From Octopus sinensis (lineage: Eukaryota): a stretch of 42,512 nucleotides of DNA. Of the stretch, positions 908 to 41,261 are shown one piece after another. Location of the stretch: contig NW_021835136.1 in assembly GCF_006345805.1 (NCBI RefSeq), forward strand, positions 1-42,512. Reading direction: 5' to 3'. A model generated the notes under the pieces. It saw nothing but the letters and a program-made list of their open reading frames with translations, did not search any database and was not told where the DNA came from. Made by a program: the position numbers and the translations under genes. How positions within the stretch are numbered: position 1 is the stretch's first letter; each line of letters opens with the position of its first letter.

Positions 908-1017
908 ATATTTTATATTATATATGGAGAAAATATTATTTCATATTATATAGGAGAAAATATAATTTTATATTATATATGGAGAAAATTTTATTTTGTA
1001 TTATATATGCAGAAAAT
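908..1017. repeat. ~28-bp minisatellite, about 4 units
   Basis: Repeated unit of the form atattatatatggagaaaat(a/t)(a/t)tatttt. Confidence 0.8.
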
Positions 1018-1138
1018 ATCGTTTTATAGCATAAAATATCAGCAAAGACGATTCTTGGAGGCTCTTTTTCGATTTTCACACTCAAAGTTTGTTTGTTCTC
1101 TGCTGTTCTATCCTCTGTTCCATTACCAGTACTTGAAC
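936..1138 (-). CDS. Candidate exon, possibly terminal, of the aGPCR-like locus (SSTGNGTEDRTAENKQTLSVKIEKEPPRIVFADILCYKT...)
   Basis: Strong acceptor tttttttcattatgtttccag at 1139; phase 1 frame open to a TAA at 936-938; no good donor seen. Confidence 0.35.
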
Positions 1139-1663: not shown

Positions 1664-2178
1664 CACAATATATATATGCACTCATATATTTATTGATTTA
1701 TATTTTTTAAAATAATAAATAAAATGACCATCCCGAAATATGTGTGTGTATATGTATATATATTTTTACATTTTCCCGAGCAATATATAATTTGTTACGG
1801 GATTTGACTAGTAAAAATGCTACTGTCTGTTTCGCGGCCTCTATTGTTGCATTTCCTCAATATTGACCACTACTTAGACATACTGACCGGATGTGCATAA
1901 ACCTCTTTTATGCTGGAAATAGACTTTATATTGATTTGGGAGTGGTAAAATGAAATGAATGGAAACGGAGTGAAAAATATTATATCATTGTTCGGCAATG
2001 GGATGTGATTTATTCCTCTTTTATATCTCTTAGAGATGAGTTAAAGCGTATGAGCTGTGTGTGTATCTATCGATCCTAATTCAAAAATTAATATGATCAC
2101 TTCGAACAAAATGAATTTTCGCCGAGGAAAATTATTTGCAGCACTAAATATTTTTCCTGTTTGAATTAAAGAAAGTAC

Positions 2179-2226
2179 TGGAATTGTGTGAATTATTCTG
2201 CCCAGTAGAGTCTGCATCTTCTACTT
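2179..2226 (-). CDS. Copy 1 linker exon 5 (VEDADSTGQNNSHNS), 48 nt, phase 1-1
   Basis: Acceptor ccttattttgtatag; donor gtactt is weak; conserved with 14624-14671. Read-through gives a TAG 11 codons later. Confidence 0.5.
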
Positions 2227-2562
2227 CTATACAAAATAAGGAGAAAACATTTTTGCCCTCGGATAATTGCTATAATTAAAAAGAAACTGAGCAAAGACAA
2301 ACAGTTCCGTAGGACAAAACGGAAAGCGCAAAATAAATGCTGATTTTTGAAATTATCCAAGCTTTGAGAAAATGTAATGAAATAGTTGTATGTATGAGAG
2401 AGAGGGGGGAGAGTCTGTGCGCTTGCGTGCACGCGTGGGTGTCCTAAGGTATCATCCGTTGTGGTTGATGATGACGACAACGACAAAGAGGATGGTATGG
2501 TGATTGATGAAGCTAATTATGACGGTAATGGTGTTAGAAAATGAAGAAACACGATTACTTAC

Positions 2563-2678
2563 TTTCATCAAGCAAATTCATGTTGAGCAATGCCTGGAAT
2601 TGTTCAAAACTTGGGAGATATTGCGCCGCAGTTGACTTTGAACACTTAAAGAGATTAATTGTTTTGTTTCAATTATTT
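2563..2678 (-). CDS. Copy 1 exon 4 (..SVQSQLRRNISQVLNN[F]QALLNMNLLDE), one T missing in a T run
   Basis: Donor gtaagt at 2562; a 42-nt stretch identical to copy 2; 18-nt in-frame indel versus copy 2. Acceptor uncertain (2678 or 2644). Confidence 0.55.
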
Positions 2679-2725
2679 CTATATTCAAATATAGCTTAGG
2701 ATTGGATCATCATAGGTAAAATAAC

Positions 2726-2784
2726 CGCATTCAGTATGGTTGAGAACAGAATTAGTGAAGAAGGCTAGAACTACAAGCGGGTGC
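2726..2784 (-). CDS. Copy 1 exon 3, short form (HPLVVLAFFTNSVLNHTEC)
   Basis: Acceptor ctaacttttag at 2785; frame open; donor gttatt is weak. The upstream long-form acceptor is CAC rather than CAG (2873-2875). Confidence 0.45.
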
Positions 2785-3132
2785 CTAAAAGTTAGTGTTA
2801 AGAACATATTCGTCCAGTACCGTGGCTTGCCCTCTTTAGCATGTAAGAAATCCACATGGTGGTCTTCCCTCCGTGTATAAATTTTTATATACATTTATAT
2901 TATATATATATATATGGTAATTCCTGGTTGGTTTTAAATTGCTTATTAGCACCTTAATTATATATAATCTTCACATTGCCATTTTGTGAAATCAATCACT
3001 CATTTTTATGTCATTCTGAAAGATATTGACAGGCGTGAGCTAACCTCCACAAGCGTAATGGATGTGAGCATTGCTGATGAGTATTAACTTCTTATAAGAA
3101 TTACCATGCTAATCTAATCCATCTGGCTTACC

Positions 3133-6100
3133 GTATTCCTGCTTGCTGAGGACATCTTTGTTGGGGATATGATTCTGCCATTTGATGCGGGGATTTTTCG
3201 GAGGCAGCGCAGGTGAATGAAAGATGTTTAGGTGAGGCTCTTGGTGTGTGTTATAGCGTCCAAGTCTCACTTCCATACAGTAGAGTGCTGAGTAACATGC
3301 AGGTGGTAGATTTCATTTTCGTGGTCTTCATCAGCTTATTGTTGTCCCAAGCCCGTTTGGAGAGTTGGGCCATCGCAGCAGCTGTTTTCCAATGCGTATA
3401 TTGAGCTCAGCGTCAAGGGATAGGTTGTAGGTGACGATAGAGTCCAGATAGGCAAACTTCTCCACCTCTTGTAATCTGTGGTCTCCAATATGTATGTTGG
3501 GATGTCCGATGTAGCCTGACCCATGATGTTGGTCTTCTTAAGGATGATAGCTAAGCCAAAGTCGTTACATGCTTGCTCAAAACAGTCAATGAACCTTTGG
3601 AGGGCTTCTTCTGTGTGTGATTACCAGAGCGGCATCATCAGCAAATAGCATCTCCTTGATCAGGACGTTTCTGATTTTGGTCTTGGCACACAGGCGCGAG
3701 AGATTGAACAGTTCCCGTCACTTCTACTGTGCAGAAAAACACTCCATCATCTGATGTCTGAAAGGCTTGTGAAAGTAAGAGCGAGAAGAAGATGCCAAAA
3801 AATGTAGGAGCGAGGACACAACCTTGCTTTACCCCGTTTTTTATTTGGAAGGCGGCTGATGTTGAACCGTTTGTGCTGTATGGTGCCTTGCATGTCATCA
3901 TGGAAAGACTTGATGATCCTCAGCAGCTTTGGGGACATCCGATTTTTTGGAGCAGGATTAAGAAGCCTGTTCTGCTTACCGAGTCAAAAGCCTTTGTTAG
4001 ATCAATGAAGGCCATATATAATGGCATTTTCTGCTCTCTGGACTCTCCTGAAGTTGGCGTACGGAGAATATCATATCGATAGTTGATCTGCTTCTTCTAA
4101 AGCCACACTGCGATTCCGGATAGATACGAGAAGCAAGTAGTTGTAGCCTGGCCAGGATAACGCGGGCAAAGGTCTTTCCAACAGTGCTTAGAAGAGATAT
4201 ACCACGGTAATTGTTACAATCACCACGGTCACCTTTGTTTTTGAAAAGCGTAATGGTGTTAGCATCCCGCATATCCTGAGGGACTGTACCCTCTTCCCAG
4301 CACTGACACAGAAGCTCATGAAGATGCCGAAGCAGGATGGGGTTTTTACCGGCTTTGATGATATCTGCGGGGGGGTGCCGTCTTTTCCCGGAGACTTAGT
4401 TCTTGCTAGGAAGTTAACAGCCTTGGTGAGCTCTGCTATAGATGGCGGACTGTCAAGTTCGCACATGACTGGCAAGATCTTGAGACTCTCGACTGCACTC
4501 AGCCACTGTAGTCTCCCGTGAGTAGAGATCCTGGTAGTGCTCCACCCATCTATCCATTTGTTGCCTTGATCCGTGATGAGATCTCCAGAGGGGCTGACTT
4601 GGTTGCGGATGGACCGAGGGCCTTCTTCAAACCGGCATACATACATCCCACAGGTGTCGCCACTGTCAGCAGCTGACTGGATACTCTGACAGATTTCCTG
4701 CCAATACCCATTTGCACAGCGTCTGGCTGTCAGTTGGGTTTTATTTCGTGCCTTTCTGAGTTCTTCGAGGGACTTTGTAGAAGATTCACTCTTGTATTGC
4801 ATCAGAGCTGCACACCTTTGCTTCGATAACTGGCTCCAGCTCTGAGAGCCCAGCATTGAACGAATCTGGGTTTACCTTTCTCTCATGCCGAAAGTATCTA
4901 TTGATTCGTATACAAAGCTTCCCTGATATAGTTCCACCTACTTTCAGCAGAGGAGGTTGGGCAGCTACTGAGGGCAACTTTGATAGAAGCAGCAAAACAT
5001 TTTCGCAGTGTAGGTTCCGAGGTTCTGGCAGTGTTAATGCGTGGTCGGCCCACTTTCTTGAAGCGATGGACTTTTTAGGGCAGAATCCTCACCCTACTTC
5101 TAATTAGTGAGTGGTCTGTGTCACAATCCGCGCTGTGGTAACTGCGGGTCAATAGAGTAGAATTCAGAAAGGATCTCCGTGTAATGATGAGATCCAGCTG
5201 ATGAGCAGTGGTGAGATCTTGGATGTCTCCAAGATGCCTTGTGGGAAGGCTTGTTGGTAAAGAATGTGTTTGTGATGCACAGGTTGTGGTATGTGCAGAA
5301 TACGAGTAGTCTCTGACCATTGTCATTCATGTTGCCAATACCAAAGTGTCCAACACAAATGGGCACGAATCATGGTCAGATCCCACGCGAGCGTTAAAAT
5401 CCCCCAGAAGGTAGATATTTTCAGTCGTTGGTATATTTTCTATGACACAGTTGAGATCTTTGTAGAACTGGTACTGGTCTCCTCTGAGCTGTAGAAAGTG
5501 AGAGTAGAGATGCTGAGTAGATGTACTGAGCCAGAAGAAGTCGAGAGGCGCAGTGAGGGGATACGCTCAGTGCCTCCTGATGGTGGTTCTATTGAGGAGA
5601 GTAATGAGTTTCTCACTGCAAAGCCAACGCCATGCTGACGAGGTTCTTCTGGATCGCTTCCTGCCAAAAGGAGGTGAAATCCTGCTCTTTGAGTTTGCCG
5701 TTCGAGGGGAGACTTGTCTCCTGCAGCCCAGCAATATCTATGTTGAGCTCTTTAGTTCACGGTCAATGATGGCCGTTTTCCTTGTGTCTTCAACCCTGAG
5801 TAGATCATCAGATATTCCAGGGCACATGGTCCTGACATTCCAACTTGCCAACCGCACAACTGGTGTTTTCTTGACTTTTAGTTGTTTGCCTGGTGCAGAG
5901 GTTGCAGGCCGCTTTTCAAGTCATACTTTAGCTTCAAGCACCCAATGAAGCAGGCGACCTGTGGCGGGTCAGCACCTTATTAACTGGGGGCTGCCCAGCT
6001 TGAGGTGGGCAGTAGCTAACCAATAGGACACGGAGGTCCCTCCCACCGTCAGAGGTAACCGTAGCGCCAATATTTTACGCCAATCTGAATAGACTTATCA

Positions 6101-6493
6101 CTCGTGACTGTTACCTCCGTGTTGTTTTACAGCTTTTTACAGCAGCACTGAAGTGTCCTCTCCAGTTTTGCGCAAGCCTGGGCTATAGATAAGAAAGTCC
6201 TGGGTAGCCCAATCGTCAGGTTTCCTCTCTCGACCTTGCTGATGTAGTCCAAAGGAGTGCAGTGCATTACGTTTGGCACCAGCTTGGTTGCAGGAGCTGC
6301 CGGAAGAGTGTCGAGTCGAACACTAGACCGCCTTCGGGGCTCCACTCCGGATTTCTTTGAAGGTTGTTTCCGTTCCGTAACCCTGGATAGGGGCCCATAC
6401 CGGGTACTGTCAGCCGGAGCCCGGAACTCGTGTCAGGCAGGGTCGTCACTCCCTGAAGTAGTGAAGAAGTTCGCTACCCACTACCTTTTCAAG
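3133..6493 (-). mobile_element. RTE-clade (BovB-like) LINE: 5' UTR, APE endonuclease and RT, frameshifted, 3' end missing
   Basis: LASWNVRT, ELNIDIAGLQET, DCNNYRGISLLS, YPESQCGFRRSRSTIDMIF, GVKQGCVLAP and FADD motifs; coding stops abruptly at RCLRKI.RIKWQNHIPNKDVLSK. Confidence 0.95.
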
Positions 6494-6513
6494 TAATGTT
6501 AAATTATTATTAG

Positions 6514-6514
<1 letters not shown>

Positions 6515-6567
<53 letters not shown>
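6515..6567. repeat. (TA)n microsatellite at the LINE 5' junction
   Basis: Pure TA run. Confidence 0.95.
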
Positions 6568-6573
<6 letters not shown>

Positions 6574-6789
6574 CACAGTTCTCTCTTTATCTTTATATGG
6601 GTTGGTTTGTCCTTTGTAAATAAAACATTGATAAAAACACTTAAGCATTTCGTCGAAGGTACGAATTAGTATATTGTGGGTCACAAGTAAAACAGTTGAT
6701 TATGGTGACGTCTAATACATGCGATAAAATCGAATGTTTGGAACAAAACAAAATAAATTTGAATAAATGTGTTAGAAGCTTTTGCTTAC

Positions 6790-6841
6790 CCAGGATATTC
6801 AACTCGGAATTTTCCAGTCACGTTAAAAACTCATGCTCCAT
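6790..6841 (-). CDS. Copy 1 exon M (MEHEF[L/F]NVTGKFRVEYPG after restoring one base)
   Basis: Acceptor cttttgcag, donor gtaagc; 52 nt versus 53 nt in copy 2, with the missing base in TTTTTAA. Confidence 0.6.
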
Positions 6842-7187
6842 CTGCAAAAGCCAGATGTGTATATATATATATGCATACATTAAATTCAAGAAACAAGTTT
6901 GATTTAAAAGCTTTGAGAAGTATAAAAAGATACAGATAAGGAAATCATTTTACATATGTATGTATTTATGTGTTTAAGCTGATCAGGCTAAACAAAATAC
7001 TGATCATAACAAAATCGATATCACTATCTACGAAACGTATTGAGCTCACTCACTATTTAAATTGACGTTTTGCATTTCTTGTATAAAATATGCATGTGTG
7101 TGTGTGTGTGAGTGTATGCATGTGTGCGCGTGTTCAGCGCGCGCGTGTGTGTGTGTTCGGAGAAAGAAGAGACAGATATCTACTCAC

Positions 7188-7270
7188 GGCTCTTGATATG
7201 TTCTCAGCAGGTTTTTTATATTCGTTGAAAGATTTTAAAATCAAACGAAATGCGAAGGATTTGGTCCAGC
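7188..7270 (-). CDS. Copy 1 exon A (WTKSFAFRLILKSFNEYKKPAENISRA), SEA-like start
   Basis: Acceptor atcaatccatag, donor gtgagt; 83 nt, phase 1 to 0, frame open; conserved with 18501-18582. Confidence 0.65.
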
Positions 7271-7503
7271 CTATGGATTGATATAGAAATAATTGCTGTA
7301 TTTATAAATGAGACACACGTCATAGATGCACATAAAACCCACATACGTAGATAAAAATATACATTCATAATCACATATACACTTAAAAATACTATAAATA
7401 AATATATTATATATACGAACATACAGACTCACATTAATACATCTGCATCTACATGTATAAACACATATATAAATGCATGTGTACCACATACACAGTTCAT
7501 GTA

Positions 7504-7554
<51 letters not shown>

Positions 7555-7621
7555 ATATATATATATATGTATATATATGAACAATTTCAGTTAGAATGGT
7601 TGATTCTCTCAATTTCGATAC

Positions 7622-7684
7622 CATATGACAAAGGCAAGAAATTCTGTCTTCTCTGCAATTCTGAGCTATTTTTCATTATTTTTT
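7622..7684 (-). CDS. Candidate 63-nt phase 1-1 exon (KIMKNSSELQRRQNFLPLSY)
   Basis: Acceptor tatttttag, donor gtatcg, frame open; no counterpart seen in copy 2. Confidence 0.2.
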
Positions 7685-8354
7685 CTAAAAATACTCTAGT
7701 AAGCACGGTTATAGAGCGAGCATACAGATGTAAGCATTGGCAGAAACGTACATTTAGTGCATATAAGTAGTCTCTATAATTATATATAATTCAAACTTTA
7801 ATTTCCTTTATATTTAACATTCACTATGGGTATCCCTACTCTTTCTGTTAGCTACTTATGACGTTATATCATATAACGTTTTTTTTAACAATATTAATAG
7901 CGTGCTGTCTATCACTCTACAAATCCATCATTTTTTGCTAAAATGTCTTATTGACAAGTTTCGCTTTTTTCACCTTCCTGAAGAGAAGATTGCATTCTTT
8001 CATTTATTCTTTTGAATAGTAACAGTGGAATTGTCGAAACATGTGTCGAAAGTAAAAATATTTGATTACACCTGCGTTAAACTCCATTTATTTATTCATA
8101 TATTATTCAAAATATTCAACGTAAACACGAAGTTTCTACCTTTATAAACAAGGAGTTACAACATCTTTACTTGAGAGATTTTGCTACCCTGGTAACTATT
8201 TATTATTTTTTCCGTGTTAATCGTTAACAAGGTAAAAATACACTCATCTATTTATATATACATATATGCAAATCAGCCACATTTGCATACATACGTACAT
8301 ATATATATATATAAGTTTATATTCATATTATACATAAGTAAACATATAATATTG

Positions 8355-8422
<68 letters not shown>

Positions 8423-8880
8423 TATATATATATACATATAATATACATTTAGAAACATTATTTGCATCTATGTGCACGTACACGTATCCAATATAGGATT
8501 TCATTATAGGGACAGCACTTCTGTGAAACGATCGTAAAAAAGGTTTAAATATTTAATTCAAAACTTATAAACTGTCATATACATTATATATTTATACGTA
8601 TACATATATACATATATTTTTATAAATATTTATATTTATTTATTTATATATTTTTAATACAACCATTTTTTTTCACACGTGTATATCTTTCTGTGAAGTT
8701 TTCTGATATTGAATTCTTAATATTAATAATAACATATTATTTAAAAATATATATAATCGCTCGCATTAAATATATAAATACCTTAATAATATTAACACTT
8801 TGATACAATAGAGCACTCAATATATATTCAGTATGTAATATTCTCATTGAATATATTTGACTAAAGATTCATATATACTC

Positions 8881-9300
8881 TTTACTCTTTTTACTCTTTT
8901 ATTTGTTTCAGTCATTTGACTGTGGCCATGCTGGAGCACCGCGTTTAGTCGAGCAAATCGACCCCAGTACTTATTCTTTGTAAGCCTAGTATTTATTCTA
9001 TCGGTCTCTTTTGCCGAACCGCTAAGTTACAGGGTCGTAAACACACCAGCATCGGTTGTCAAGCGATGTTGAAGGGGGGGCAAAAACAGACACAAACATA
9101 TACACACATACACACACATAGATATATATACATATACATATATACGACAGGCTTCTTTCAATTTCCGTCTACCAAATCCACTCACAAGGCTTTGGTCGGC
9201 CTGAGGTTATAGCAGAAGACACTTGCCCAAGGTACCACGCAGTGGGACTGAACCCGGGACCATATGGTTCGTAAGCAATCTACTTACCACACACCCACTA
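8881..9300 (-). mobile_element. tRNA-head SINE (octopus family 2), near full length
   Basis: Reverse complement has the head gtgtggtaag..ggttcagtcccactgcgtgg, the middle gtgagtggatttggtagacggaaa and the tail gctccagcatggcc..aaagagtaaa. Confidence 0.9.
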
Positions 9301-9303
9301 CTA

Positions 9304-9361
<58 letters not shown>

Positions 9362-9651
9362 TATATGCAACCATGCCCACACATGCAGACATATGTATTA
9401 GAATATGATTGTTCCTTTCCAGCAACACAAAACCATCCAATGGCCATTTTTATGGGTTTCGAAACAAAAAGCCTACAGTTACAAGGAAAATGACAATAAT
9501 AAAAGCACAGTAAAATAGAACGCAAAAGAAATATCTAAAGCGGTTTTATTAATTTGATTACCCTGTGTACGAGGGATACAATGTGTGCAAGGAAGAGGGA
9601 TATTAGCGTTTGGAAGGAGAATCGCTTTCAATTGAAATTTCAGGAAGAACC

Positions 9652-9930
9652 TGCGTGGTACTTGGGCAAGTGTCTTTCTACTTAAGCCTCGGACCGACCA
9701 AAACATTGTGAGTGGATTTGGTAGACGGAAACTGAAAGAAGCCTGTCGTATATATGTATATGTATATATATCTATGTGTGTGTATGTGTGTATGTTTGTG
9801 TCTGTTTTTGTCCCCCCCCTCCAACATCGCTTGACAACCGATGCTGGTGTGTTTACGACCCTGTAACTTAGCGGTTCGGCAAAAGAGACCGATAGAATAA
9901 ATACTAGGCTTACAAAGAATAAGTACTGGG
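9652..9930 (+). mobile_element. Family 2 SINE, 5'-truncated
   Basis: Same middle and 3' motifs as 8881-9300, opposite orientation. Confidence 0.85.
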
Positions 9931-10129
9931 GCCTTTTCTCTCTCGCGTCGCTTAATTTAGGCTTTTTGGACACAGTTTCTGCACTTTTCACACTTTCAGG
10001 CCTTTTCATTAGAATTATAGCAAGAGAAGTCTGCTTTTACCTGCCTTTTTATTCAGTCTTTAGTAGTTTTTCTGTGCCACATTGTAAATACTCGGCTAAG
10101 CTTTTTTTCCATCTCTATACGTTCTTCTA

Positions 10130-10790
10130 CTGCTATTAAGCATCTCCCAGTCTGGTCTTTCCTTAATTACAGTTGGTTGATATCTGCTTTCGGATGTTGA
10201 GCTCCACATATTTTCAGCAACTTATTAGATTTTGTCAAATTTATTTATTTTGATTATTATTTCTCTTTATCAGAGGTTTTGTAGGAGTTCCTTGAGGCTT
10301 GCATTGTGGGAGTTCCTGGACACTTGCTCATTCTAATGTCGACCCTCCAGTTTGTGGCCAAAGCTTACTCTTGCGCTGCCAATATAGTGTTCTCGGTCTC
10401 TTTCTTTAGAATTCCTTTCATCAGCCAATCCCACCTATTTTTTGTTATATGGAAATTGATTATGTACTCCCTTCTTGCGTCATTCCTTTTCATTTCTTTT
10501 TGAATTTCTTCCTTCGTTTTTCCTGCTTTCAATACTCCCTCATTCCTAACTGTCACTAGCAAGGTTTCCTTACTTTGGGTTCGGTATCACATTAAGCCCT
10601 CGAGTTCGATACGCACAACTGTCAGTCTTCTTTCTCCATTCGTTCTCTTCGTGTATCGGCGATCAATGTCTGCACGTGGATGATGGGCTCCATACATCGT
10701 TAGGACCTTTCTTGACTTCCTGTCCATCTCCTTTAGCTTCTCTGTCCACTTCAGTTTTCCAGCTTTCAAACCAATATTTTGCTCACTCGC
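10130..10790 (-). mobile_element. R4/Dong-type LINE fragment (C-terminal to RT)
   Basis: LKEMDRKSRKVLTMYGAHHPRADIDR and WDWLMKGILKKETENTILAAQE motifs. Confidence 0.8.
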
Positions 10791-11009
10791 CAAAAGTGCT
10801 CTCTTTTTCTCTTTTCCTTCATGTCGTGGTGTTTGATTCCATCTGTGTGTGAGTGTGAGTGTGAGTGAGAGAGAGAGAGGGAGTGTGTGTGTGGGGGGAG
10901 AGGGCATTGTAAACGATGAATGAAATGAACATGAAATGAAAAAATCGTGTAAATAAAAGAGCATAATAAACGGAATAATACAGGTTTCAGACATTGGTAC
11001 GTGACCAGC

Positions 11010-11196
11010 CGATTCGGTGTAGGGGGTTAAGTTGATTACATTGACCCAGAGCTCAACTTGCGCTTATTTTATCGACACAGAAATTATGAAAAGCAAAGTC
11101 AATCTTGGCGGAATTTGAACTCAGAACGTAAAGACAGACGAAGTACTGCAAAGCATTTCTCCCGCTCTGCTAACGATTCTGCCAGCTTACCGCCTA
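11010..11196 (-). mobile_element. tRNA-head SINE (octopus family 3)
   Basis: Reverse complement reads aggcggtaagctggcagaatcgttagc..gttctgagttcaaattccgcc, followed by a conserved central domain. Confidence 0.8.
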
Positions 11197-11402
11197 ATTT
11201 AAGGATTAATAGTGATAAGTTTTCATAATGGTCTAATGAGAAATTGAAATCATCACATCACTAAATGCATATGAAAATCTATTCAATTTGACAGTGCCAT
11301 AGTAACATTTGAGAGAAATAAATTGCTTATATTCTATGACAAACAGATATGTAGGGTATGTCATTGAATATTTGAAGATTCTACAACCACCGCTCCAACG
11401 TA

Positions 11403-11648
11403 ATGTATGCAAAGAGGTATGTACCAGTAATATCCCTGTTGTTATTTCTGCTTCTCTATCTACTCAGCCTGTCTGCAGAATGTTTACGAAAACGTGCTTT
11501 TAACGATATTACAATAATGAACTCAACCCTCCAAAGTAATAAATTCTTTAATAACGTTTCCATAAATGAGTCAAATGATTTGCCGTTGAACGAGATGGAC
11601 ACATTCCTGGAGGACTCAAACGGGAGAATAGGTTGCATTACCTTTTGA
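11403..11648 (+). CDS. Candidate secreted-protein ORF or first exon, antisense within the aGPCR-like intron
   Basis: MYAKRYVPVISLLLFLLLYLLSLSA looks like a signal peptide, followed by RKR and three N-glycosylation sequons (NST, NVS, NES); possible phase-1 donor after 11631. Confidence 0.35.
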   Translation: MYAKRYVPVISLLLFLLLYLLSLSAECLRKRAFNDITIMNSTLQSNKFFNNVSINESNDLPLNEMDTFLEDSNGRIGCITF

Positions 11649-11860
11649 TAAATCATTGTAATTACAAACACACACACACACACACAGGACAGTCATAATG
11701 GAACAGACATAGAAAGACATACACATACACACTCACCACCCCCACCCCCACCAGAGTGGTCGTATTTAAACAGACAGAAAGTCACTCACAAAAATTACTT
11801 CTTCTCATCCTGCTACTTCTACTACTGTAAAAGTCATTTAAAAATAATTTGCTCGCTCAC

Positions 11861-12003
11861 CATCATCAATGCCTTTGCTCTGTTCTGCATTGTAACATTG
11901 AGACATGTCTGGTTCTTGCCAGATACCAGTAAACGGTGAACACTTTTGTGATGACAGGTTTTGACTTGATGCCATTTCTGGATGCCCCATCGTTCTGGAA
12001 GAA
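11861..12003 (-). CDS. Adhesion-GPCR HormR (HRM) domain exon 2 (SSRTMGHPEMASSQNLSSQKCSPFTGIWQEPDMSQCYNAEQSKGIDD)
   Basis: Acceptor tttattttttcag, donor gtgagc; 143 nt, phase 2 to 1; C...G.W..PD.S.C motif typical of HormR domains. Confidence 0.85.
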
Positions 12004-12791
12004 CTGAAAAAATAAATGTTAAATATTGTCAGTCGAGTTTATTCATTCTGAGGAGAATTTCATCAGTCTCAGAGGAATATAAGAAACCTTCGAACTGGTC
12101 GTGATTTGAACTCATAATTTAGTGAAAGAAGGATAAATGGTGTCTTGCATTTGGGGGAGAAATCTATTATTTACTCCTGACCCCTATCCTCAAAACTAAT
12201 GTCAAATATTTTCTAACTAGAGTTCAGATATAAAAACAATATTCCTGCATCTGTTTTTATTTACAATAATTTCTTGTTTTTATGATTATTCAATACAAGA
12301 TTAGTTGGAACGGTGTAAGTGATGCAGAATTAAGGAGCCAAGTTGTTAGTTCAAGTTGAATGGGGGAATTAGTTGCTAATATTTCGCCACCATAGACATC
12401 AGTAGCAACAGCGGCAGCAATGGATTTATGTATATTTTCCTACATATGCACAGATTTGAGTGATTCCACCAGTTGGTCTTGTCTTAAAACTAATAAAGCT
12501 CAGCCTCTGGGAGGAACAATTTAGATGCTTAACCTGTGGAATGACGTGGTAGAAATGAGAGAAGAGAGACCGTATTATATAGTCTGTGATGAGTGAAATC
12601 CCAGGATGACCATCATGTACTAGCAAGATATATAGCTCTACAGTAATCATAAAATTGAATAAATAGTATTAGCCTGAAACCACAAGAAATCACTGATAGT
12701 TCTATTGGCTGTATCTAGGTATGTGCTTTCTTTGCTACAATTATTTTGTGAAATTCTGGAACTTACAAGAATCTTTAAATCTTTGAATAAT

Positions 12792-13165
12792 GCTGATTTC
12801 AAATTTTGGCAGCTATTTGGGGGGGGGTAGTTCGATACATAGACCCCAGTGGTACTTATTTTATCGATCCCGTAAGGGTAAAAGACAAAGTCGACCCTGG
12901 TGGCATTTGATCTCAGAATGTAAAGTCAGAAGAAATGCTGCTAAGCATTTTGTCCGGCATGGTAACGATTCCGCTAGCTCTCCACCATAAAGCCTTGTCT
13001 AATATTGGTTTCAAATTTTGGCACAAGGCCAGCAATTTCAGGGGAAGGGATAAGTCGTTTACACCAACCCCAGTGCTCAATTGGTATTTATTTCATCGAA
13101 CCGAAAAAATTAAAGGCAAAGTCGACCTTAGCGGAATTTGAACTCAGAACATAAAAACGAATGAA
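12792..13165 (-). mobile_element. Two tandem family 3 SINE copies (about 12792-12990 and 13005-13165)
   Basis: Repeated ttcaaattttggca..cccagtg..aaagtcgacc..atttga(a)ctcagaa blocks, similar to 11010-11196. Confidence 0.8.
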
Positions 13166-13405
13166 ATGAAAGCTTTGTATAATATTGGCGACAAAGCAAA
13201 CCTAGATAGTTAGGACAAGGCTAAATTATATCAAATAATGTATAAAATGTAAAAATGCTGGGACAAGAGATTGCAACCGATAGACGTTTAATTCTATCTT
13301 GTTAATCTATAAACCTGTTATTGCTCTACCAAGTAACATTCTCTCACAATAGGATGGCGCTGAAAACTTCAAACTTTGAGTAGAAATAAATCAATACAAA
13401 CGAAC

Positions 13406-13520
13406 CAATGCCTGGTGGCTACATTTCCATGACATGGGATCTCCGCAGTAGTTCCTATTTTTGTCATTGGCCAAGAGAAAGCTCGATTGTTAGTTGATGT
13501 TGTGCTTTCATCACAAACCA
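13406..13520 (-). CDS. Adhesion-GPCR HormR domain exon 1 (VCDESTTSTNNRAFSWPMTKIGTTAEIPCHGNVATRH[C])
   Basis: Acceptor ttggttctttttcag, donor gttcgt; 115 nt, phase 1 to 2. The terminal TG joins the T of the 12003 exon to make the conserved Cys. C...WP.T..G.TA..PC...ATR.C is the HormR pattern. Confidence 0.88.
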
Positions 13521-13556
13521 CTGAAAAAGAACCAAAACATGGATATAAGAGAAGCT

Positions 13557-13575
13557 AGTAGTAGTAGTAGTAGTG

Positions 13576-13625
<50 letters not shown>

Positions 13626-13626
13626 T

Positions 13627-13669
<43 letters not shown>

Positions 13670-13680
13670 CAGCAGCAGCA
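13557..13680. repeat. (TAG)n/(CAG)n microsatellite
   Basis: About 40 triplets, agt repeats grading into gca. Confidence 0.95.
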
Positions 13681-13861
13681 GTTAATGTTGGAAATAAATT
13701 GTTTGGACCACCTGCTGGCTGATTTGAGGACAATGATACATGAAGTGTTGCAAACATATACGGAGAGCATATATATTTATTCAAAATAGACAGATTTCTA
13801 GTTTTTCATTTAGTAGTTTGTAAAGAGATAAATGATTTAGAAATGAATTACAATCCCTTAC

Positions 13862-13956
13862 AAGACAAGGACCCAACCAGGCTCCATGCAATTCTTGGAA
13901 GTGTAGTCTATTCTTAACTAAAATGGCGACAATATGATTTTCTCCATATTCTTGCT
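13862..13956 (-). CDS. Candidate 95-nt exon (QEYGENHIVAILVKNRLHF...)
   Basis: Acceptor atatttgaacag, donor gtaagg, frame open; one base short of a symmetric phase 1-1 exon. Confidence 0.25.
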
Positions 13957-14623
13957 CTGTTCAAATATTTGAGAAAAATTACATTAAAGTGTCCTACTTA
14001 TTAAAATTCTATTTCTTTATTTATGCAGCTGAAGATGGCATTGCATTTAAATTGATGTAATTTTTGTATTGTTCAATTAAATTTAGCCGATTGAAACTGC
14101 ATAACTACTTGAGATCCTGTAGATTATATATATATATATTTTTTCTTATATATTCTTAAAAAACAATAAATAAAATAGAAATAGAGGTGTGTGCATATGT
14201 ATATATATATATTTTATATTTTCTCGAGCAATATATAACTGGTTACGGGATATGACTACTCAGAATGCTAGTCTGTTTCGCGGCCTCTAGTGTTGAATTT
14301 CGTCAATATATTGATCACTCTTTAGACATACTGACCGGAAGCGCAAAACCTAATGTACGCTAGAAATGGGTAGATGTTATATTGATTTGGCGATGGTGAA
14401 ATGAAATGAATGGAAACGAAGTGAAAATATATCCTTTTCCGGCAATGGGATATGATTTGTTCCTCTCTTATATCCCTTAGACACTGTTTAAATCGTATGA
14501 GCTGTGTGTATCTATCGATCCTAATGTAAAAATTAACTTGATCACTTCGTACGAAATGAATTTTCGCTGAGGAAAATTATTTGCAGCACTAAATAGTTTT
14601 CCTGTTTGAATTAAAGCAAGTAC

Positions 14624-14671
14624 TGGAATTGTTTGAATTTTTCTGCCCATTAGAGTCTGCATCTTCTACTT
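14624..14671 (-). CDS. Copy 2 linker exon 5 (VEDADSNGQKNSNNS), 48 nt, phase 1-1
   Basis: Acceptor ttctaattttgtatag, weak donor gtactt; in frame with exon 4 and with the HormR exon at 13520. Confidence 0.55.
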
Positions 14672-14836
14672 CTATACAAAATTAGAAGAAAACATTTTTG
14701 CCCTCGGTTAATTGGTATAATTAAAAAGAAACTGAGCAAAGACAAACAGTTCCGTAGTGACAAGAAACGGAAAAGCGCAAAATAAAATGCTTTTTTTTGA
14801 AATTATCCAAGCGTTGAGAAAATGTAAATAAATAGT

Positions 14837-14869
<33 letters not shown>

Positions 14870-15001
14870 GGGGGAAAGAGTCTGTGTGCTTGGTATCATC
14901 TACTGTGGTTGATGATGACGACAACGACTAAGAGGTTGGTGATTGATGAAGCTAATTATGACGGTAATGATGATTAAATTAATAAGAAACACGATACTTA
15001 C

Positions 15002-15118
15002 TTTCATCAATGAATTTCATGTGGCTTTTCTTAACTCCTAAGTTAAGCAATTCCTGGAAATTGTTCAAAACTTGGGAGATATTGCGCCGCAGTTGACTTT
15101 CAGTCATTTCGCTAAATA
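15002..15118 (-). CDS. Copy 2 exon 4 (FSEMTESQLRRNISQVLNNFQELLNLGVKKSHMKFIDE)
   Basis: Donor gtaagt; frame open; phase-1 acceptor tttactgtatag gives 117 nt. Alternative AGs at 15112 and 15157. Confidence 0.65.
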
Positions 15119-15238
15119 CTATACAGTAAATAGCAAATATTTTATTTCTGTTTGAGCTGAAATAAAAAATAAATACATACATGTATGTCGGTATGTATGT
15201 ATGTATGTAGCTAGCTAGCTAGCTAGAAATATACATAC

Positions 15239-15285
<47 letters not shown>

Positions 15286-15633
15286 TCGTTTAAAAGCTGC
15301 CCTGTTAATCCTTGGGTCCAACAATGACACCATGCATTGAGTACATATTAAATTTCATGAAACATGAATATTTCTCAAGCAATGAACAATTTTCATCAAA
15401 GCAATGATATAATTTGTCGACTCGGAACTTATTGCAAAGCTTCATGATAAACAACAGTACCACCACCATCGCCACCATATCTGCAATACACACGCCATCC
15501 AGACTTCTGACGCCATCACCATCAATACTTTTCATCACTTTCCGCTCCACCACCATCACCACTGTCTTTCACATCGCTTTCTATCAGTATATTCAAACAT
15601 AGCTTAGGATTGAATCATCATAGCTAAAATAAC

Positions 15634-15747
15634 CGCATTCAGTATGGTTGTGAACAGAATTAGTGAAGGAGGCTCGAACTACAAGCGGGTGACTAAAAGT
15701 TGGTCTTAAGAATATATTCGTCCAATGCACATGAAGGTCTTCGCTCC
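15634..15747 (-). CDS. Copy 2 exon 3 (SEDLHVHWTNIFLRPTFSHPLVVRASFTNSVHNHTEC); internal alternative acceptor at 15693
   Basis: Acceptor gatttatgcag; frame open; 33-nt in-frame indel versus copy 1; donor gttatt is weak. Confidence 0.5.
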
Positions 15748-15794
15748 CTGCATAAATCTTTGAATACACTTTATATATGTATTTATACATATAC

Positions 15795-16165
15795 AGGAGT
15801 GGCTGTGTGGTAAGTAGCTTGCTAACCAACCACATGGTTCCGGGTTCAGTCCCACTGCGTGGCATCTTGGGCTAGTGTCTTCTGCTATAGCTCCGGGCCG
15901 ACCAATGCCTTGTGAGTGGATTTGGTAGACGGAAACTGAAAGAAGCCTGTCGTATATATGTATATATATGTGTGTGTGTGTAGTGTGTGTGTTTGTGTGT
16001 CTGTGTTTGTCTCCCAAGCATGGCTGTGTGTACTCCCCGTCACTTAGCGGTTCGGCAAAAGAGACTGGGCTTACAAAGAATAAGTCCCGGGTCGATTTGC
16101 TCGATTAAAGGTGGTGCTCCAGCATGGCCGCAGTCAAATGACTGAAACAAGTAAAAGAGTGAAAA
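15795..16165 (+). mobile_element. Family 2 SINE, near full length, absent from copy 1
   Basis: Head ggagtggctgtgtggtaagtagc..ggttcagtccc and tail actgaaacaagtaaaagag. Confidence 0.92.
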
Positions 16166-16192
16166 AAGTGAGAAAGATACATATATATATAA

Positions 16193-16258
<66 letters not shown>

Positions 16259-16470
16259 CCTGGTTGGTTTTAAAATGTGTGTTAGCTACCTTCAATATTT
16301 TATAATCTTCACATTGCCATTTTGTGAAATCAGTCCCTAATTCCTATGGCATTCTCAATGATACTGAGAGGCGTGAGTTAGCCTCCACCAGCCGTAATGG
16401 AGTGAGCATTGCTGATGAGTATTAACTTCCTATAAGAAATTACCATGCTAATCTAATCCATCTGGCTTAC

Positions 16471-16490
16471 CGTGGGGAATGTTCTCCCCA
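16471..16490 (-). CDS. 20-nt microexon (GENIPH), phase 2 to 1
   Basis: Acceptor ctgtttgcattgacag, donor gtaagc; links exon M (phase 2) to the long exon 3 (phase 1) in frame. Confidence 0.5.
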
Positions 16491-17003
16491 CTGTCAATGC
16501 AAACAGACCATATGTCTTTTTGTGGCTAAGGAGTCTATGACTAATATTTCTAATAATACTGGTGCTCACTGCACTCTTTTCACACTTAGTGACTGTGAAT
16601 TATTTCCTTGTTGGTTTCAAATTGCCGATAGCCACCACAATTTATATATATACACACCCATATATGTGTGTGTATATATATGTGGTATATATATATGTGT
16701 GATGTATATGTATGTTTATATACATATATATAAATACAGCAATTTAATAAATAAAACATATGCATACATACATACATATATGTACATACCTACATCTATA
16801 TGTATATATACATACATATGAGTACAGGACACCACAAAAAAGCGTAGAACACAACGAGAAAACATAAAATCAAACTAGGAAAGGACTCTTTTCAACAACG
16901 AAAAACAGAGTACAAGACAAACAATACAAGGAACATTCCCCTTCTTCAGATGCCCCTGTTTCGACTCAATGCGTATGTATGTATATATATGTATATATAT
17001 ATT

Positions 17004-17072
<69 letters not shown>

Positions 17073-17154
17073 ATATATTATATATATATATACATATATT
17101 ATATATAGATATATATATTATGTATATATATATATGTATATATATATATACATA

Positions 17155-17193
<39 letters not shown>

Positions 17194-17437
17194 TATATAT
17201 ATCTATATCTACAACATATATATACAGTTCTCTCTGTATCTTTATATGGTTTTTTGTCCTTTGTATAATAAAACATGGATAAACACTTAAACATTTCATT
17301 GAATGTATGAATTAGTATATTGTGGGTCACAAGTACAACACTGTTGATTATTGTGACGTATAATACATGCGATAAAATCGAATGTTTGGAACAAAAGCAA
17401 ATAAATTTGAATAAATGTGTTAGAAGCATTTGCTTAC

Positions 17438-17490
17438 CCACAGTCTTCAACTCTAAATGTTCCCGTCACGGTTGAAAGGTCATGCTCCAT
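17438..17490 (-). CDS. Copy 2 exon M (MEHDLSTVTGTFRVEDC[G]), 53 nt
   Basis: Acceptor cttttgcag, donor gtaagc, frame open. Confidence 0.65.
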
Positions 17491-17502
17491 CTGCAAAAGC
17501 CG

Positions 17503-17552
<50 letters not shown>

Positions 17553-17617
17553 CATTAAATGAAAGAAACTGAGTTTGATTTTAAATCGTTGAGATGTATT
17601 GAAAAATAGATAAAGAA

Positions 17618-17930
17618 ATAATTTTATTCTGAAACGCAGGATAATGCTAATGATATAACGTGAACCGGATGAAATATCCATAATTTGCAGAAAAATCTGT
17701 CGGCGGCCAGCTATGTGACTACAACTCACACCCCTGTGATTACGCTTCAAGTGCTTTACCATTAAGCTAAACTGCGCGAACGACAAATACTTCTGCAAAG
17801 TTAGGCTATATACATCTAGCTTTATAAGACGCGTAATCTGGCCGCCGACAGAGTTTTCGGCAACAGGTGAATACGTTATCCTGTTCATGCTATACTATTA
17901 GCATTATCCTGCGTTTGAGAATATAATTAT
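17618..17930. mobile_element. MITE or fold-back element, ~310 bp
   Basis: Terminal inverted repeat ataatt(t/a)tattct(g/c)aaacgcaggataatgctaat, plus an inner inverted pair tctgtcggcggccag / ctggccgccgacaga; not present in copy 1. Confidence 0.8.
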
Positions 17931-18500
17931 ACATAAATATATTAGCTTGACACTCGGTAAAGTGGGGGAAATGAGAGGGTTTTTAATGTTCCGAGCATAT
18001 CTCTTTTTCAGAAAGGAAAACGAAAATGTTGAGAAGAAAAATATTACCAAAAGGAAGTGTGTGATTACATATGGTTTTATGTGTGTGTGTGGTGTGTGTT
18101 GGGTGTGTGTGTGTGGTGTGTGTAAACACAAGATTAGTGAATATTTGAGTAGGATTTTATTTACTGTCAGAATCGGAAATTATAAGACGGATATATTAAG
18201 ACAAAATAGTGGATAGAACAGTCTTTTTATTGACCAGAAAAAATTCAGTAAGTTAAAAAAAGAAAGTTTTATGTAATAGTTACTATCAGTAAATGGAGTT
18301 GAATGTCTCTGAATTTCATGAAACCTCACTATTTATTTGACGTTTCACATTTTTTTATAAAAATATGCATGTGTGTGTGTGTATGTGTGCGTGTGAGAGT
18401 GTGTATGTGTATGCATGTGTGCGCATGTTCAGTGCATATGTGTGCGTGCACGCGCGTCTGTGTACGGAGAAAGAGAGAGAGAGGGCAGATATCTACTCAC

Positions 18501-18582
18501 GGCTCTTGATATGTTCTCAGCGGGATTTTATATTCGTTGAACTTTTTAAAAATCAAACGAAATACGAGGGATTTTGTCCAGC
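18501..18582 (-). CDS. Copy 2 exon A (WTKSLVFRLIFKKFNEYK[N/I]PAENISRA after restoring one base)
   Basis: Acceptor atcaatccatag, donor gtgagt; 82 nt versus 83 nt in copy 1, with the missing base in AAAATCCC. Confidence 0.6.
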
Positions 18583-18710
18583 CTATGGATTGATATAGAA
18601 AATAATCTCTGCTTTTATAAATGAGACACGTCATAGATGCACATAAAACCCACATACGTAGAAAAAATATACATTCATAATCACATATACACTTAAAATA
18701 CTATATATAC

Positions 18711-18753
<43 letters not shown>

Positions 18754-19038
18754 ATATATATATATTATATTATTTCTATTCTACCTATTATATACGTTTT
18801 TATCATTATTATATTTGCAATTTACTTAGCATTGACATTTAATTATTATTTATTTTATATTTCTATTATATGTAATTTCTAGATGGTGTATGTATTTAAT
18901 TGTTCATTTTGAATTGATAAAAGCTGTTTTTTTTATTTTAATTTTTTATATATATCTTATAATGTGTGAAATTTGATTTAGTATTTCTAAATTTAATTTT
19001 TCCCTTGTAAGTTTGGATTTTATTCACTCAAATAATAA

Positions 19039-19104
<66 letters not shown>

Positions 19105-19107
<3 letters not shown>

Positions 19108-19232
19108 TTATCATTCCCTTTCTTCCTGTCGCTCTCTTCGTGTATCGGCTATCAATGCCTGCACATGGATGATTGGTTCCATACATCGTTAGGACCTTTC
19201 TTGACTTCCTGTCCAACTCCTTTAGCTTTCCT
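19105..19232 (-). mobile_element. Short R4/Dong-type LINE fragment
   Basis: LKELDRKSRKVLTMYG.HP.A.ID.RYTKR, the same segment as 10620-10760. Confidence 0.75.
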
Positions 19233-19234
19233 TG

Positions 19235-19700
19235 CGTGCCATTCGCCCCTCGGCCTCTTTTTGATCCACGACTGTTGTTCGGTAATGAGACGAGTTGCGG
19301 AATGCGTGCCTCACAAAAGGCGACCACACCTGTTCACCGTCGTCTACATAGAGCCGGAGGTGTCGCAGTCTCAGCGCGTGTCCGTGTCTGCGTATCATCA
19401 ACCATGGCACACCCAGTCCTCCTTTTAACGGGTGTTGACAGCAAATGGATCGCCTGACCATCGGGACGCATCCTTTCCACAAGAAGCGGAAGAGAATGCG
19501 TTGTAGTTTGGTGATGGTAGGGTCGGGACAAGGTACGACGGTCAGGCGGTAGTAGATGATGGACGCGACGTACATGTTCGCCACCTCCGCCCGAACTTTT
19601 AGGGACAGATTCCTCTCGGCCCATTGCTGGGCGAGAGTGACCACCCTACTCGTTATCTCGTTCCAGTTCTTCTCCATTTGGAGGTCGGGTATTCTGTTGT
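19235..19700 (-). mobile_element. Tx1/L1-clade LINE fragment (post-RT region)
   Basis: WAERNLSLKVRAEVANMYVASIIYY..LQRILFRFLWKG..HPLKGGLGVP. Confidence 0.85.
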
Positions 19701-20020: not shown

Positions 20021-20059
20021 TATATATATATATATAATATGTATGTGTGTGTGTGTGTG

Positions 20060-26892: not shown

Positions 26893-26896
26893 ACGA

Positions 26897-36377: not shown

Positions 36378-36408
<31 letters not shown>

Positions 36409-41210: not shown

Positions 41211-41256
<46 letters not shown>

Positions 41257-41261
41257 TTGAT

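What the first reader, a model, noticed from the sequence alone, without database searches (positions are those of the whole stretch)
1700..18705. Tandem duplication puts a second SEA-like exon block downstream of the HormR exons, in a compatible phase
Seen: the order on the minus strand is SEA block (18582-14624), HormR (13520-11861), SEA block again (7270-2179). The HormR exon ends in phase 1 and exon A of the downstream copy starts in phase 1. The intervening 4.5 kb is mostly repeats and shows no GAIN/7TM exons. Inference: this is either one receptor with an unusual SEA-HormR-SEA ectodomain made by exon-block duplication, or nested/partial paralogues. Either would be a mechanism for diversifying cephalopod aGPCR ectodomains.
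Basis: partly seen in the sequence, partly recalled or inferred. Interest (0 to 1): 0.7.

Follow-up and report, generated by a model that had tools for sequence, protein, structure and literature searches.

The report
Duplicated exon block in truncated octopus receptor gene
An octopus gene derived from an adhesion receptor carries a second, damaged copy of a three-exon domain block that splices in frame after its hormone-receptor-like domain, but the product has no membrane part and the arrangement is already in the public annotation, so it is a fairly ordinary case of exon duplication.

Summary
On the minus strand a ~4.5-kb segment carrying three exons (A, B, C) occurs at 18725-14187 and again at 7415-1742 (85-93% identity), with two HormR exons between. 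The splice phases fit: block 1-1, HormR 1-1, terminal exon T phase 1.

The window is the whole Octopus sinensis scaffold VCDQ01005878.1. Its RefSeq model XP_029657078.1 already joins 11861 to 7270, as do at least 12 other O. sinensis and O. vulgaris models.

- **Parent family:** LRR, Cys-rich, ABC block, HormR, GAIN, 7TM ('ADGRG6-like'). The intact block is predicted as a ferredoxin-like, SEA-topology fold (pLDDT 87).
- **No receptor:** every model containing the second block stops in exon T. No GAIN or 7TM exons follow in five loci.
- **The second block is a remnant:** it lacks strand β3 and both conserved cysteines, and is predicted unfolded (pLDDT 52).
- **This copy:** it lacks the LRR and Cys-rich exons and has three 1-bp exon deletions. 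The assembly's own indel error rate would produce about that many.

Verdict: a phase-compatible intragenic exon-block duplication in a young, multi-copy, 7TM-less offshoot of an adhesion GPCR family. This copy is probably non-functional. Interest is low to moderate.

The parts
18501..18582 (-). Exon A, upstream copy (strand b1 and the start of helix a1 of the SEA-like domain). 82 nt instead of 83: a 1-bp deletion unique to this scaffold shifts the frame.
   Evidence: Five-copy alignment; splice sites ag|GC...CC|gtgagt. The RefSeq model starts at exon B, skipping this exon.
17438..17490 (-). Exon B, upstream copy (MEHDLSTVTGTFRVEDCG: end of helix a1, strand b2). 53 nt, phase 0 to 2. Holds the start codon of RefSeq XP_029657078.1.
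15002..15156 (-). Exon C, upstream copy. 155 nt, phase 2 to 1. Encodes b3 (SNRNKIFAIYC...), a2 and b4 (...HMKFIDE).
   Evidence: 100% tblastn match to P0010 and P0058; acceptor tttcag|CTC and donor GAAA|gtaagt.
14187..15001 (-). Intron sequence downstream of exon C that is included in the duplicated segment (matches 1742-2562).
13406..13520 (-). HormR exon 1 (H1). 115 nt, phase 1 to 2.
   Evidence: Pfam HRM hit on H1+H2.
11861..12003 (-). HormR exon 2 (H2). 143 nt, phase 2 to 1. Identical at every base in five loci.
7416..11860 (-). Intron between H2 and A'. Holds transposon fragments, a 285-bp inverted repeat and microsatellites. No GAIN or 7TM exon.
7188..7270 (-). Exon A', downstream copy. 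83 nt, intact, phase 1 to 0.
   Evidence: 100% match to P0002, P0010 and P0058; alignment.
6790..6841 (-). Exon B', downstream copy. 52 nt: a 1-bp deletion near 6821 creates the TGA at 6818-6820 that ends the RefSeq ORF. Reads CG->PG, so the first conserved cysteine is lost.
3134..6508 (-). Degenerate LINE (RVT_1 reverse transcriptase) inserted in the B'-C' intron. Present in L001 and absent in L002.
2563..2644 (-). Exon C', downstream copy. It is 5'-truncated (no b3, second cysteine lost), uses a new acceptor (ttaag|TGTTC), has a 21-nt in-frame deletion shared with L001, L005 and L006, and has a 1-bp deletion unique to this scaffold near 2602.
939..1138 (-). Terminal exon T (SSTGNGTEDRTAE...), phase-1 acceptor. 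The sister loci stop at ...AETNF*. Here a 5-nt insertion removes that stop and the frame runs on to 939.

Best explanation
The window is one copy of a young, multi-copy gene family found so far only in Octopus sinensis and O. vulgaris. The family derives from LRR-bearing 'ADGRG6-like' adhesion GPCR genes, whose canonical layout is LRR, Cys-rich, ABC block, HormR, GAIN, 7TM. In the family's ancestor, a ~4.5-kb genomic segment was copied into the phase-1 intron after HormR exon 2, upstream of a terminal exon (T) that carries a stop. That segment holds the three exons (A, B, C) of the ferredoxin-like, SEA-topology domain that precedes HormR. The three-exon module begins and ends in phase 1. The H2 donor and the T acceptor are also phase 1. 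Splicing H2>A'>B'>C'>T therefore keeps the reading frame (shown). The product is not a receptor: it ends in T with no GAIN or 7TM (shown for all models and five loci). The inserted copy is a remnant. A deletion shared by all copies removed strand b3 and the second conserved cysteine, and the first cysteine became proline. It is predicted to be an unfolded tail rather than a second SEA domain (inferred from AF2). The unit then spread by segmental duplication to at least 9 annotated loci in O. sinensis. The copy on this scaffold has no LRR or Cys-rich exons and carries three 1-bp exon deletions. Its RefSeq ORF is 190 aa. It is most likely a non-functional fragment, though possibly still transcribed (inferred).
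For: Duplication and exon map. Window identity and RefSeq model B-C-H1-H2-A'-B'(stop). Parent architecture (LRR_8, HRM, GPS, 7tm_2 in P0018, P0028, P0031, P0035). Canonical paralogues continue from H2 ('...DID.E|NIE...') into GAIN, whereas this subfamily continues into 'GWTKSF...'. All A'B'C' models end at 'AETNF*' (P0002, P0009, P0041, P0050, P0053-55, P0057, P0066, P0067). T is also used directly after HormR (P0004) and after exon C (P0068), so it is a general phase-1 terminal exon. The same order occurs in L002, L005 and L006 (L001 begins within the HormR intron and holds H2 to T), with no GAIN hit in any of the four. Intact block: AF2 pLDDT 87.1, pTM 0.77, b-a-b-b-a-b. Remnant: pLDDT 52.0, pTM 0.24, no strands, at a similar alignment depth. 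The 18-residue gap and the Cys losses are shared by all downstream copies. Near-neutral pattern: dN/dS 0.47-0.96 and codon-position counts 13/14/12. 5' truncation: homology to L006 stops at window 19099, and no Cys-rich or LRR hit lies in 19.1-42.5 kb.
Against: The frameshifts may not be real. L001 and L006 differ by only 7.0 mismatches/kb but by 9.1 gap openings/kb, and all 9-10 exon indels seen are 1-bp deletions. The assembly's error rate alone predicts about 3.4 indels in this window's 765 exonic nt, and 3 are seen. O. vulgaris has long intact ORFs with the same architecture (844 and 684 aa). H2 and the start of T are perfectly conserved in five loci while their flanks vary (p=0.0017). These points hint that some members are under selection or gene conversion. 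The AF2 result for the remnant rests on a 14-sequence alignment. Expression was not tested here. The missing 5' exons could lie off this unplaced scaffold.
Confidence: 0.65

Rival explanations
1. The family encodes functional secreted proteins (LRR, Cys-rich, SEA-like, HormR, tail) that act as soluble ligands or decoys for the membrane-bound paralogues. The A'B'C' segment is a retained, selected C-terminal extension. The frameshifts in this scaffold are assembly errors, and its 5' exons lie off the scaffold.
For: Intact ORFs of 844, 684 and 476 aa in O. vulgaris, with LRR repeats and the stop in T. L001 and L005 have fully open A'B'C'T. H2 and the start of T are invariant across five loci. The assembly's indel error rate is high enough to explain the frameshifts.
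Against: Variable sites in the ABC exons are spread evenly over codon positions, and dN/dS is 0.5-1.0. The remnant lacks b3 and both cysteines and is predicted disordered. Most O. sinensis models are ORFs of 211 aa or less that start inside exons. The window has no LRR or Cys-rich exon within 24 kb upstream.
Confidence: 0.27
2. It is one true adhesion GPCR with a SEA-HormR-SEA ectodomain, whose GAIN and 7TM exons lie beyond the scaffold end.
For: Phase compatibility would allow C' (phase 1) to join a phase-1 GAIN exon as H2 does in canonical paralogues. The scaffold ends only ~0.9 kb beyond T.
Against: None of at least 12 models in two species continues past T, and the stop in T is conserved in the four sister loci. 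There is no GAIN hit within 7.5-10 kb downstream of T in L001, L002, L005 or L006.
Confidence: 0.05
3. The duplication is an assembly artefact, such as a haplotig collapse or mis-join.
For: The window is an unplaced PacBio-era scaffold with many small indels.
Against: The two copies differ by 12-15%. They also differ by a 3.4-kb LINE, a ~450-bp deletion and different exon-C acceptors. The same up/down differences recur at chromosomal loci L002, L005 and L006 and in O. vulgaris gene models.
Confidence: 0.02

Closest known systems
ADGRG6/GPR126 extracellular region (CUB-PTX-SEA-HormR-GAIN; Leon et al. 2020, PMC6954182)
   Same: A ferredoxin-like SEA-type domain lies directly N-terminal to HormR, and as in Gpr126 curated sequence models miss it. 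In the full-length octopus paralogues HormR is followed by GAIN/GPS and 7tm_2. NCBI names the family 'ADGRG6-like'.
   Different: The N-terminus is LRR plus a Cys-rich module, not CUB-PTX. There is no furin or GSVVV cleavage motif in the b2-b3 loop. The locus studied here has no GAIN or 7TM and carries a second, truncated copy of the SEA-like exons after HormR.
Exon shuffling or duplication of symmetric class 1-1 modules in metazoan extracellular proteins (Patthy's phase-compatibility rule; from established knowledge)
   Same: The three-exon module and the two-exon HormR module both start and end in phase 1, and the copy landed in a phase-1 intron. The frame is therefore kept and several alternative joins are possible: C>T, H2>T, H2>A', A>B'.
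   Different: The inserted copy did not stay a complete domain, because it lost b3 and its disulfide pair. It adds a remnant rather than a new folded module.
7TM-less (N-terminal-fragment-only) transcripts of adhesion GPCR genes made through alternative terminal exons (from established knowledge of aGPCR transcript diversity)
   Same: The products end in an alternative terminal exon located in the intron between HormR and GAIN, giving an ectodomain-only protein.
   Different: Here the GAIN and 7TM exons appear to be absent from the loci altogether, so the truncated form is the only product. The unit has also been amplified to many loci.

Membership tests
Adhesion GPCR (class B2) | 7tm_2 transmembrane domain | tested here: not met
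   tblastn with P0015, P0018 and P0009 finds no 7TM exon in the window, nor do P0009, P0015 and P0005 in L001 or L002. All models with A'B'C' end in T. Full-length paralogues do have 7tm_2.
Adhesion GPCR (class B2) | GAIN domain with GPS motif | tested here: not met
   A GAIN subdomain-A peptide gives no hit in W, L001, L002, L005 or L006. Paralogues P0018, P0028, P0031 and P0035 have Pfam GPS.
HormR / HRM domain (PF02793) | Match to the Pfam HRM profile at the curated cut-off | tested here: inconclusive
   H1+H2 peptide: E 1.4e-5, 25.8 bits against a cut-off of 26.2, covering profile positions 7-64 of 66. In full-length paralogues the same segment sits directly before GAIN.
SEA domain (PF01390) | Match to the Pfam SEA profile | tested here: not met
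   No hit for the window's blocks or for octopus paralogues. Only the distant homologue P0035 matches, at E 0.0072 and 16.9 bits (cut-off 26.4), covering profile positions 3-100 of 106.
SEA domain (PF01390) | Ferredoxin-like b-a-b-b-a-b sandwich | tested here: met
   Met for the upstream-type block: AF2 pLDDT 87.1, with elements E2-11, H21-32, E38-45, E50-59, H64-76, E91-94. Not met for the downstream-type block: pLDDT 52 and no strands.
SEA domain (PF01390) | Structural similarity to solved SEA domains | tested here: inconclusive
   Foldseek against PDB gives no hit at E<=0.001. The top hits are generic ferredoxin-like folds. The zebrafish Gpr126 ECR (6v55_A) ranks 15th with E 0.022 and TM 0.39.
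SEA domain (PF01390) | Cleavage motif (GSVVV-type or furin site) in the b2-b3 loop | tested here: not met
   The loop reads ...VEDCG|SNRNK IF..., with neither motif. Cleavage is not universal among SEA domains.
Symmetric 1-1 exon module (exon shuffling) | Both flanking introns in phase 1 and module length a multiple of 3 | tested here: met
   The A acceptor is phase 1 and the C donor is phase 1. Intact lengths are 83+53+155=291 nt (upstream type) and 83+53+83=219 nt (downstream type). HormR is 115+143=258 nt, also 1-1.
Unprocessed pseudogene | Frame-disrupting mutations that are real, with loss of essential exons | tested here: inconclusive
   There are three 1-bp deletions (A, B', C') and no LRR or Cys-rich exons on the scaffold. 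The assembly's indel error rate would produce about as many deletions.

The most novel reading that the evidence does not exclude
The O. vulgaris/sinensis lineage has evolved and amplified a family of secreted, 7TM-less LRR-SEA-HormR proteins from an adhesion GPCR. These would act as soluble partners or decoys of the membrane receptors. Their HormR exon 2 is kept identical across paralogues by selection or gene conversion, and the duplicated block serves as a new C-terminal tail.
Probability: 0.25. Interest if true: 0.5.

Novelty: new member of a known kind. Interest (0 to 1): 0.3.

Why it matters
It is a clean, datable example of the phase-compatibility rule. A three-exon 1-1 module was copied into a phase-1 intron and is read in frame at once. 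It also shows what can happen next: loss of a strand and of a disulfide pair.

It shows that part of the 'adhesion GPCR G6-like' expansion annotated in common octopus genomes consists of 7TM-less derivatives and fragments. That matters for counts of cephalopod GPCR repertoires.

It does not show a new way of building receptor ectodomains.

Tried and rejected
- **Pfam on raw translated windows:** I used spliced peptides instead.
the conserved ORF at 15706-15596 / 2792-2688 (93% nt identity) and the ORF ending near 14624/2179 are rejected. They have no phase-compatible splice sites, appear in none of about 70 family proteins, and their amino-acid identity is what neutral DNA divergence would give.
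- **PDB sequence-profile search with the block alignment:** nothing meaningful.
- **Structure prediction of the frameshift-corrected window peptide:** I used the O. vulgaris and O. sinensis versions.
- **Frameshifts as proof of pseudogenisation:** downgraded after the L001/L006 comparison showed more gap openings than mismatches.
- **Exon versus flank variability:** flank estimates of 30-43% variable columns are inflated by microsatellite and transposon misalignment, so only H2 and the codon-position test were used.
- **O. bimaculoides orthologue (L003):** the contig ends right after H2, so it cannot show whether the second block exists there.
- **Locus DNA for the O. vulgaris model P0010:** not retrievable, because the gene range is 102 kb and the model runs on into ankyrin-repeat exons, so it is probably chimeric.
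- **Literature:** one search found no description of this octopus family.


Full report
**What the window is.** The window is identical to the whole 42,512-bp unplaced scaffold VCDQ01005878.1 of the Octopus sinensis assembly GCA_006345805.1. RefSeq places gene LOC115231134 (XP_029657078.1, 190 aa) on its minus strand from 17490 to 6818.

**The observation.** Self-comparison shows a collinear, same-strand duplication between 18725-14187 and 7415-1742. The blocks are 85-96% identical. The lower copy is longer because a degenerate LINE with a reverse-transcriptase domain sits at 3134-6508. That LINE is present in the sister scaffold L001 but absent from the chromosomal paralogue L002.

I mapped the exons using gene-model proteins found by homology search. 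All are on the minus strand:
- Upstream block: A 18582-18501, B 17490-17438, C 15156-15002.
- HormR: H1 13520-13406, H2 12003-11861.
- Downstream block: A' 7270-7188, B' 6841-6790, C' 2644-2563.
- Terminal exon: T 1138-939.

All exons have AG/GT splice sites. The phases are A 1>0, B 0>2, C 2>1, H1 1>2 and H2 2>1, and T starts in phase 1. More generally, both the ABC module and the HormR module are symmetric 1-1 units.

So does a well-conserved ORF at 15706-15596 / 2792-2688. Neither is in any family protein, and neither can be spliced in phase.

**What the exons encode.** H1+H2 match Pfam HRM at E 1.4e-5 and 25.8 bits, 0.4 bit under the curated cut-off.

An exhaustive HMMER search found 36 relatives; the 19 whose source names were looked up are all Octopus proteins or unnamed Logan transcripts, many called 'adhesion GPCR G6-like' or 'GPR126-like'. 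The full-length ones (P0018, P0028, P0031, P0035) are LRR, a Cys-rich module, the ABC block, HRM, GAIN/GPS, 7tm_2.

The ABC block gets no Pfam SEA hit in octopus proteins. AlphaFold2 on a 15-sequence alignment gives a confident model: pLDDT 87.1, pTM 0.77, order b1-a1-b2-b3-a2-b4. This is the ferredoxin-like sandwich that defines SEA. The block also lies directly before HormR, exactly as the SEA domain of Gpr126 does. That domain, too, could not be recognised from sequence (PMC6954182).

Two further results bear on this:
- Foldseek gives only weak, generic ferredoxin-fold hits. The Gpr126 extracellular region ranks 15th at E 0.022.
- The block of a distant relative (P0035) matches Pfam SEA over positions 3-100 of 106, at E 0.007.

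'SEA-like' is therefore a fair label for the intact block, but membership by curated criteria is not met. There is no cleavage motif in the b2-b3 loop.

**What the second block is.** In canonical paralogues, H2 ('...DID.E') is followed by the first GAIN exon ('NIE..FS..L..IS.KSVYFK'). In this subfamily it is followed by 'GWTKSF...', which is exon A'.

All downstream copies, in every locus and both species, lack 18 residues (SNRNKIFAIYCIVFSEMT). This segment holds strand b3 and a conserved cysteine. It was lost through a ~450-bp genomic deletion that also created a new acceptor. The partner cysteine in 'CG' has become 'PG'. At a similar alignment depth, AlphaFold2 gives this remnant pLDDT 52, pTM 0.24 and no strands.

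After C', every model runs into exon T and stops at '...AETNF*'. T is also used directly after HormR in another paralogue (P0004) and directly after exon C in an isoform of LOC115212456 (P0068). It is therefore a general phase-1 terminal exon in the HormR-GAIN intron.

No GAIN or 7TM exon is found in the window, nor within 7.5-10 kb downstream of T in four sister loci. The products are 7TM-less.

**How widespread it is.** The same layout recurs at CM016859.1 (L002) and twice on CM016887.1 (L005, L006); scaffold VCDQ01005698.1 (L001) holds the H2-to-T part. At least five more annotated O. sinensis genes hold parts of it, and O. vulgaris models of up to 844 aa have it.

The two copies within a locus differ by 12-15%. 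The loci differ from one another by 0.7-5.8%. The O. bimaculoides HormR region differs by about 25%. The differences between upstream-type and downstream-type copies are shared by all loci. The block duplication therefore predates the amplification of the unit.

No O. bimaculoides protein with the second block was found, but that is weak evidence. The lower flank (900-1745) shows no homology to the introns around HormR. A copy of [A..C + 0.8 kb] therefore sits between H2 and T. This is a displaced intragenic duplication rather than a head-to-tail one.

**State of this copy.**
- Exon A has a unique 1-bp deletion, which is why RefSeq starts its ORF at exon B.
- Exon B' has a unique 1-bp deletion that creates the stop ending the RefSeq ORF.
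- Exon C' has another unique 1-bp deletion.
- Exon T has a 5-nt insertion that removes the family stop.
- Homology to sister locus L006 ends ~0.5 kb upstream of exon A (window 19099), at transposon-rich sequence.
- The Cys-rich and LRR exons present in L002 and L006 are absent from the remaining 23 kb.

These points suggest a dead fragment, with one strong caveat. L001 and L006 look like two haplotypes of one locus (7.0 mismatches/kb), yet they differ by 9.1 gap openings/kb. All 9-10 exon frameshifts seen across the five loci are 1-bp deletions. At that error rate about 3.4 indels are expected in this window's 765 exonic nt, and 3 are observed. The frameshifts cannot be trusted without accurate reads.

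**Selection.**
- Pairwise dN/dS for the block exons is 0.47-0.96, on 63-76 codons.
- Variable sites in the block exons fall 13/14/12 on codon positions 1/2/3. That is no sign of protein-level constraint.
- By contrast, H2 is identical at all 143 bases in five loci, while 30 of 568 flank columns vary (p=0.0017). The start of T is also invariant.
- This H2 conservation is unexplained. Selection on HormR or gene conversion are the candidates.

**Conclusion.** It does not build a receptor with two SEA domains. It appends a decayed SEA-like remnant and a short tail to a 7TM-less derivative of an LRR-type adhesion GPCR, in a recently amplified gene family. This particular copy is probably non-functional. 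A minority reading remains open: the family encodes secreted LRR-SEA-HormR proteins with a function.

Noticed in passing
window 11861-12003 (H2) and 1098-1138 (start of T); L001, L002, L005, L006 equivalents: HormR exon 2 is identical at all 143 bases in five paralogous loci, while 30 of 568 flanking columns vary (p=0.0017). The first ~40 nt of exon T are also invariant. Either selection or gene conversion could explain this.
   Followed up: partly
L001 versus L006 (CM016887.1 30-71 kb), and all five loci: L001 and L006 differ by 7.0 mismatches/kb but by 9.1 gap openings/kb, and every exon frameshift seen is a 1-bp deletion. The O. sinensis assembly probably carries several indel errors per kb in this repeat family, and L001 is probably a haplotig of L006.
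   Followed up: partly
window 22606-26896 and 35903-40169 (+ strand): Two copies of a LINE, 91-96% identical, with Exo_endo_phos endonuclease and RVT_1 reverse-transcriptase ORFs broken by frameshifts. A third, different degenerate LINE lies at 3134-6508 (- strand), inside the downstream block.
   Followed up: partly
window 8962-9242 and 9651-9931: A 285-bp inverted repeat at 95% identity. The same ~250-450-bp element recurs at 15772-16169, 20019-20259, 22850-23089, 36137-36376 and 41231-41649, so it is probably a SINE- or MITE-like repeat.
   Followed up: no
window 13556-13669: A (TAG)38 microsatellite lies 36 bp upstream of the H1 acceptor. AT-rich microsatellites also abut both 5' ends of the duplicated segment (7430-7580 and 18700-18800).
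   Followed up: no
window 31574-31932 (- strand): An Asn-rich low-complexity ORF, with stops here, matches the first exon of O. vulgaris model CAJ1099352.1 (P0010). That 102-kb model is probably chimeric: it joins this exon to A-B-C-H1-H2-A' and then to ankyrin-repeat exons.
   Followed up: partly
window 15596-15706 and 2688-2792 (- strand): An ORF (...FTNSVHNHTECGYFSYDD...) is kept open in all five block copies and is the best-conserved stretch between the two copies (93% nt). It is in no gene model and cannot be spliced in phase.
   Followed up: yes
O. sinensis models P0053, P0055 (L006) and P0068 (L002): Annotated isoforms join upstream exon A directly to downstream B' (skipping C, HormR and A'), or join exon C directly to T. 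The shared phases allow several alternative products, or these may reflect recombinant copies.
   Followed up: partly
window 10590-11063 and 19031-19333 (- strand): Two copies of a transposon-derived ORF fragment (...KELDRKSRKVLTMYG.NHP...YTKR...). The same peptide is exonised at the N-terminus of O. sinensis model P0054, fused to A'.
   Followed up: no
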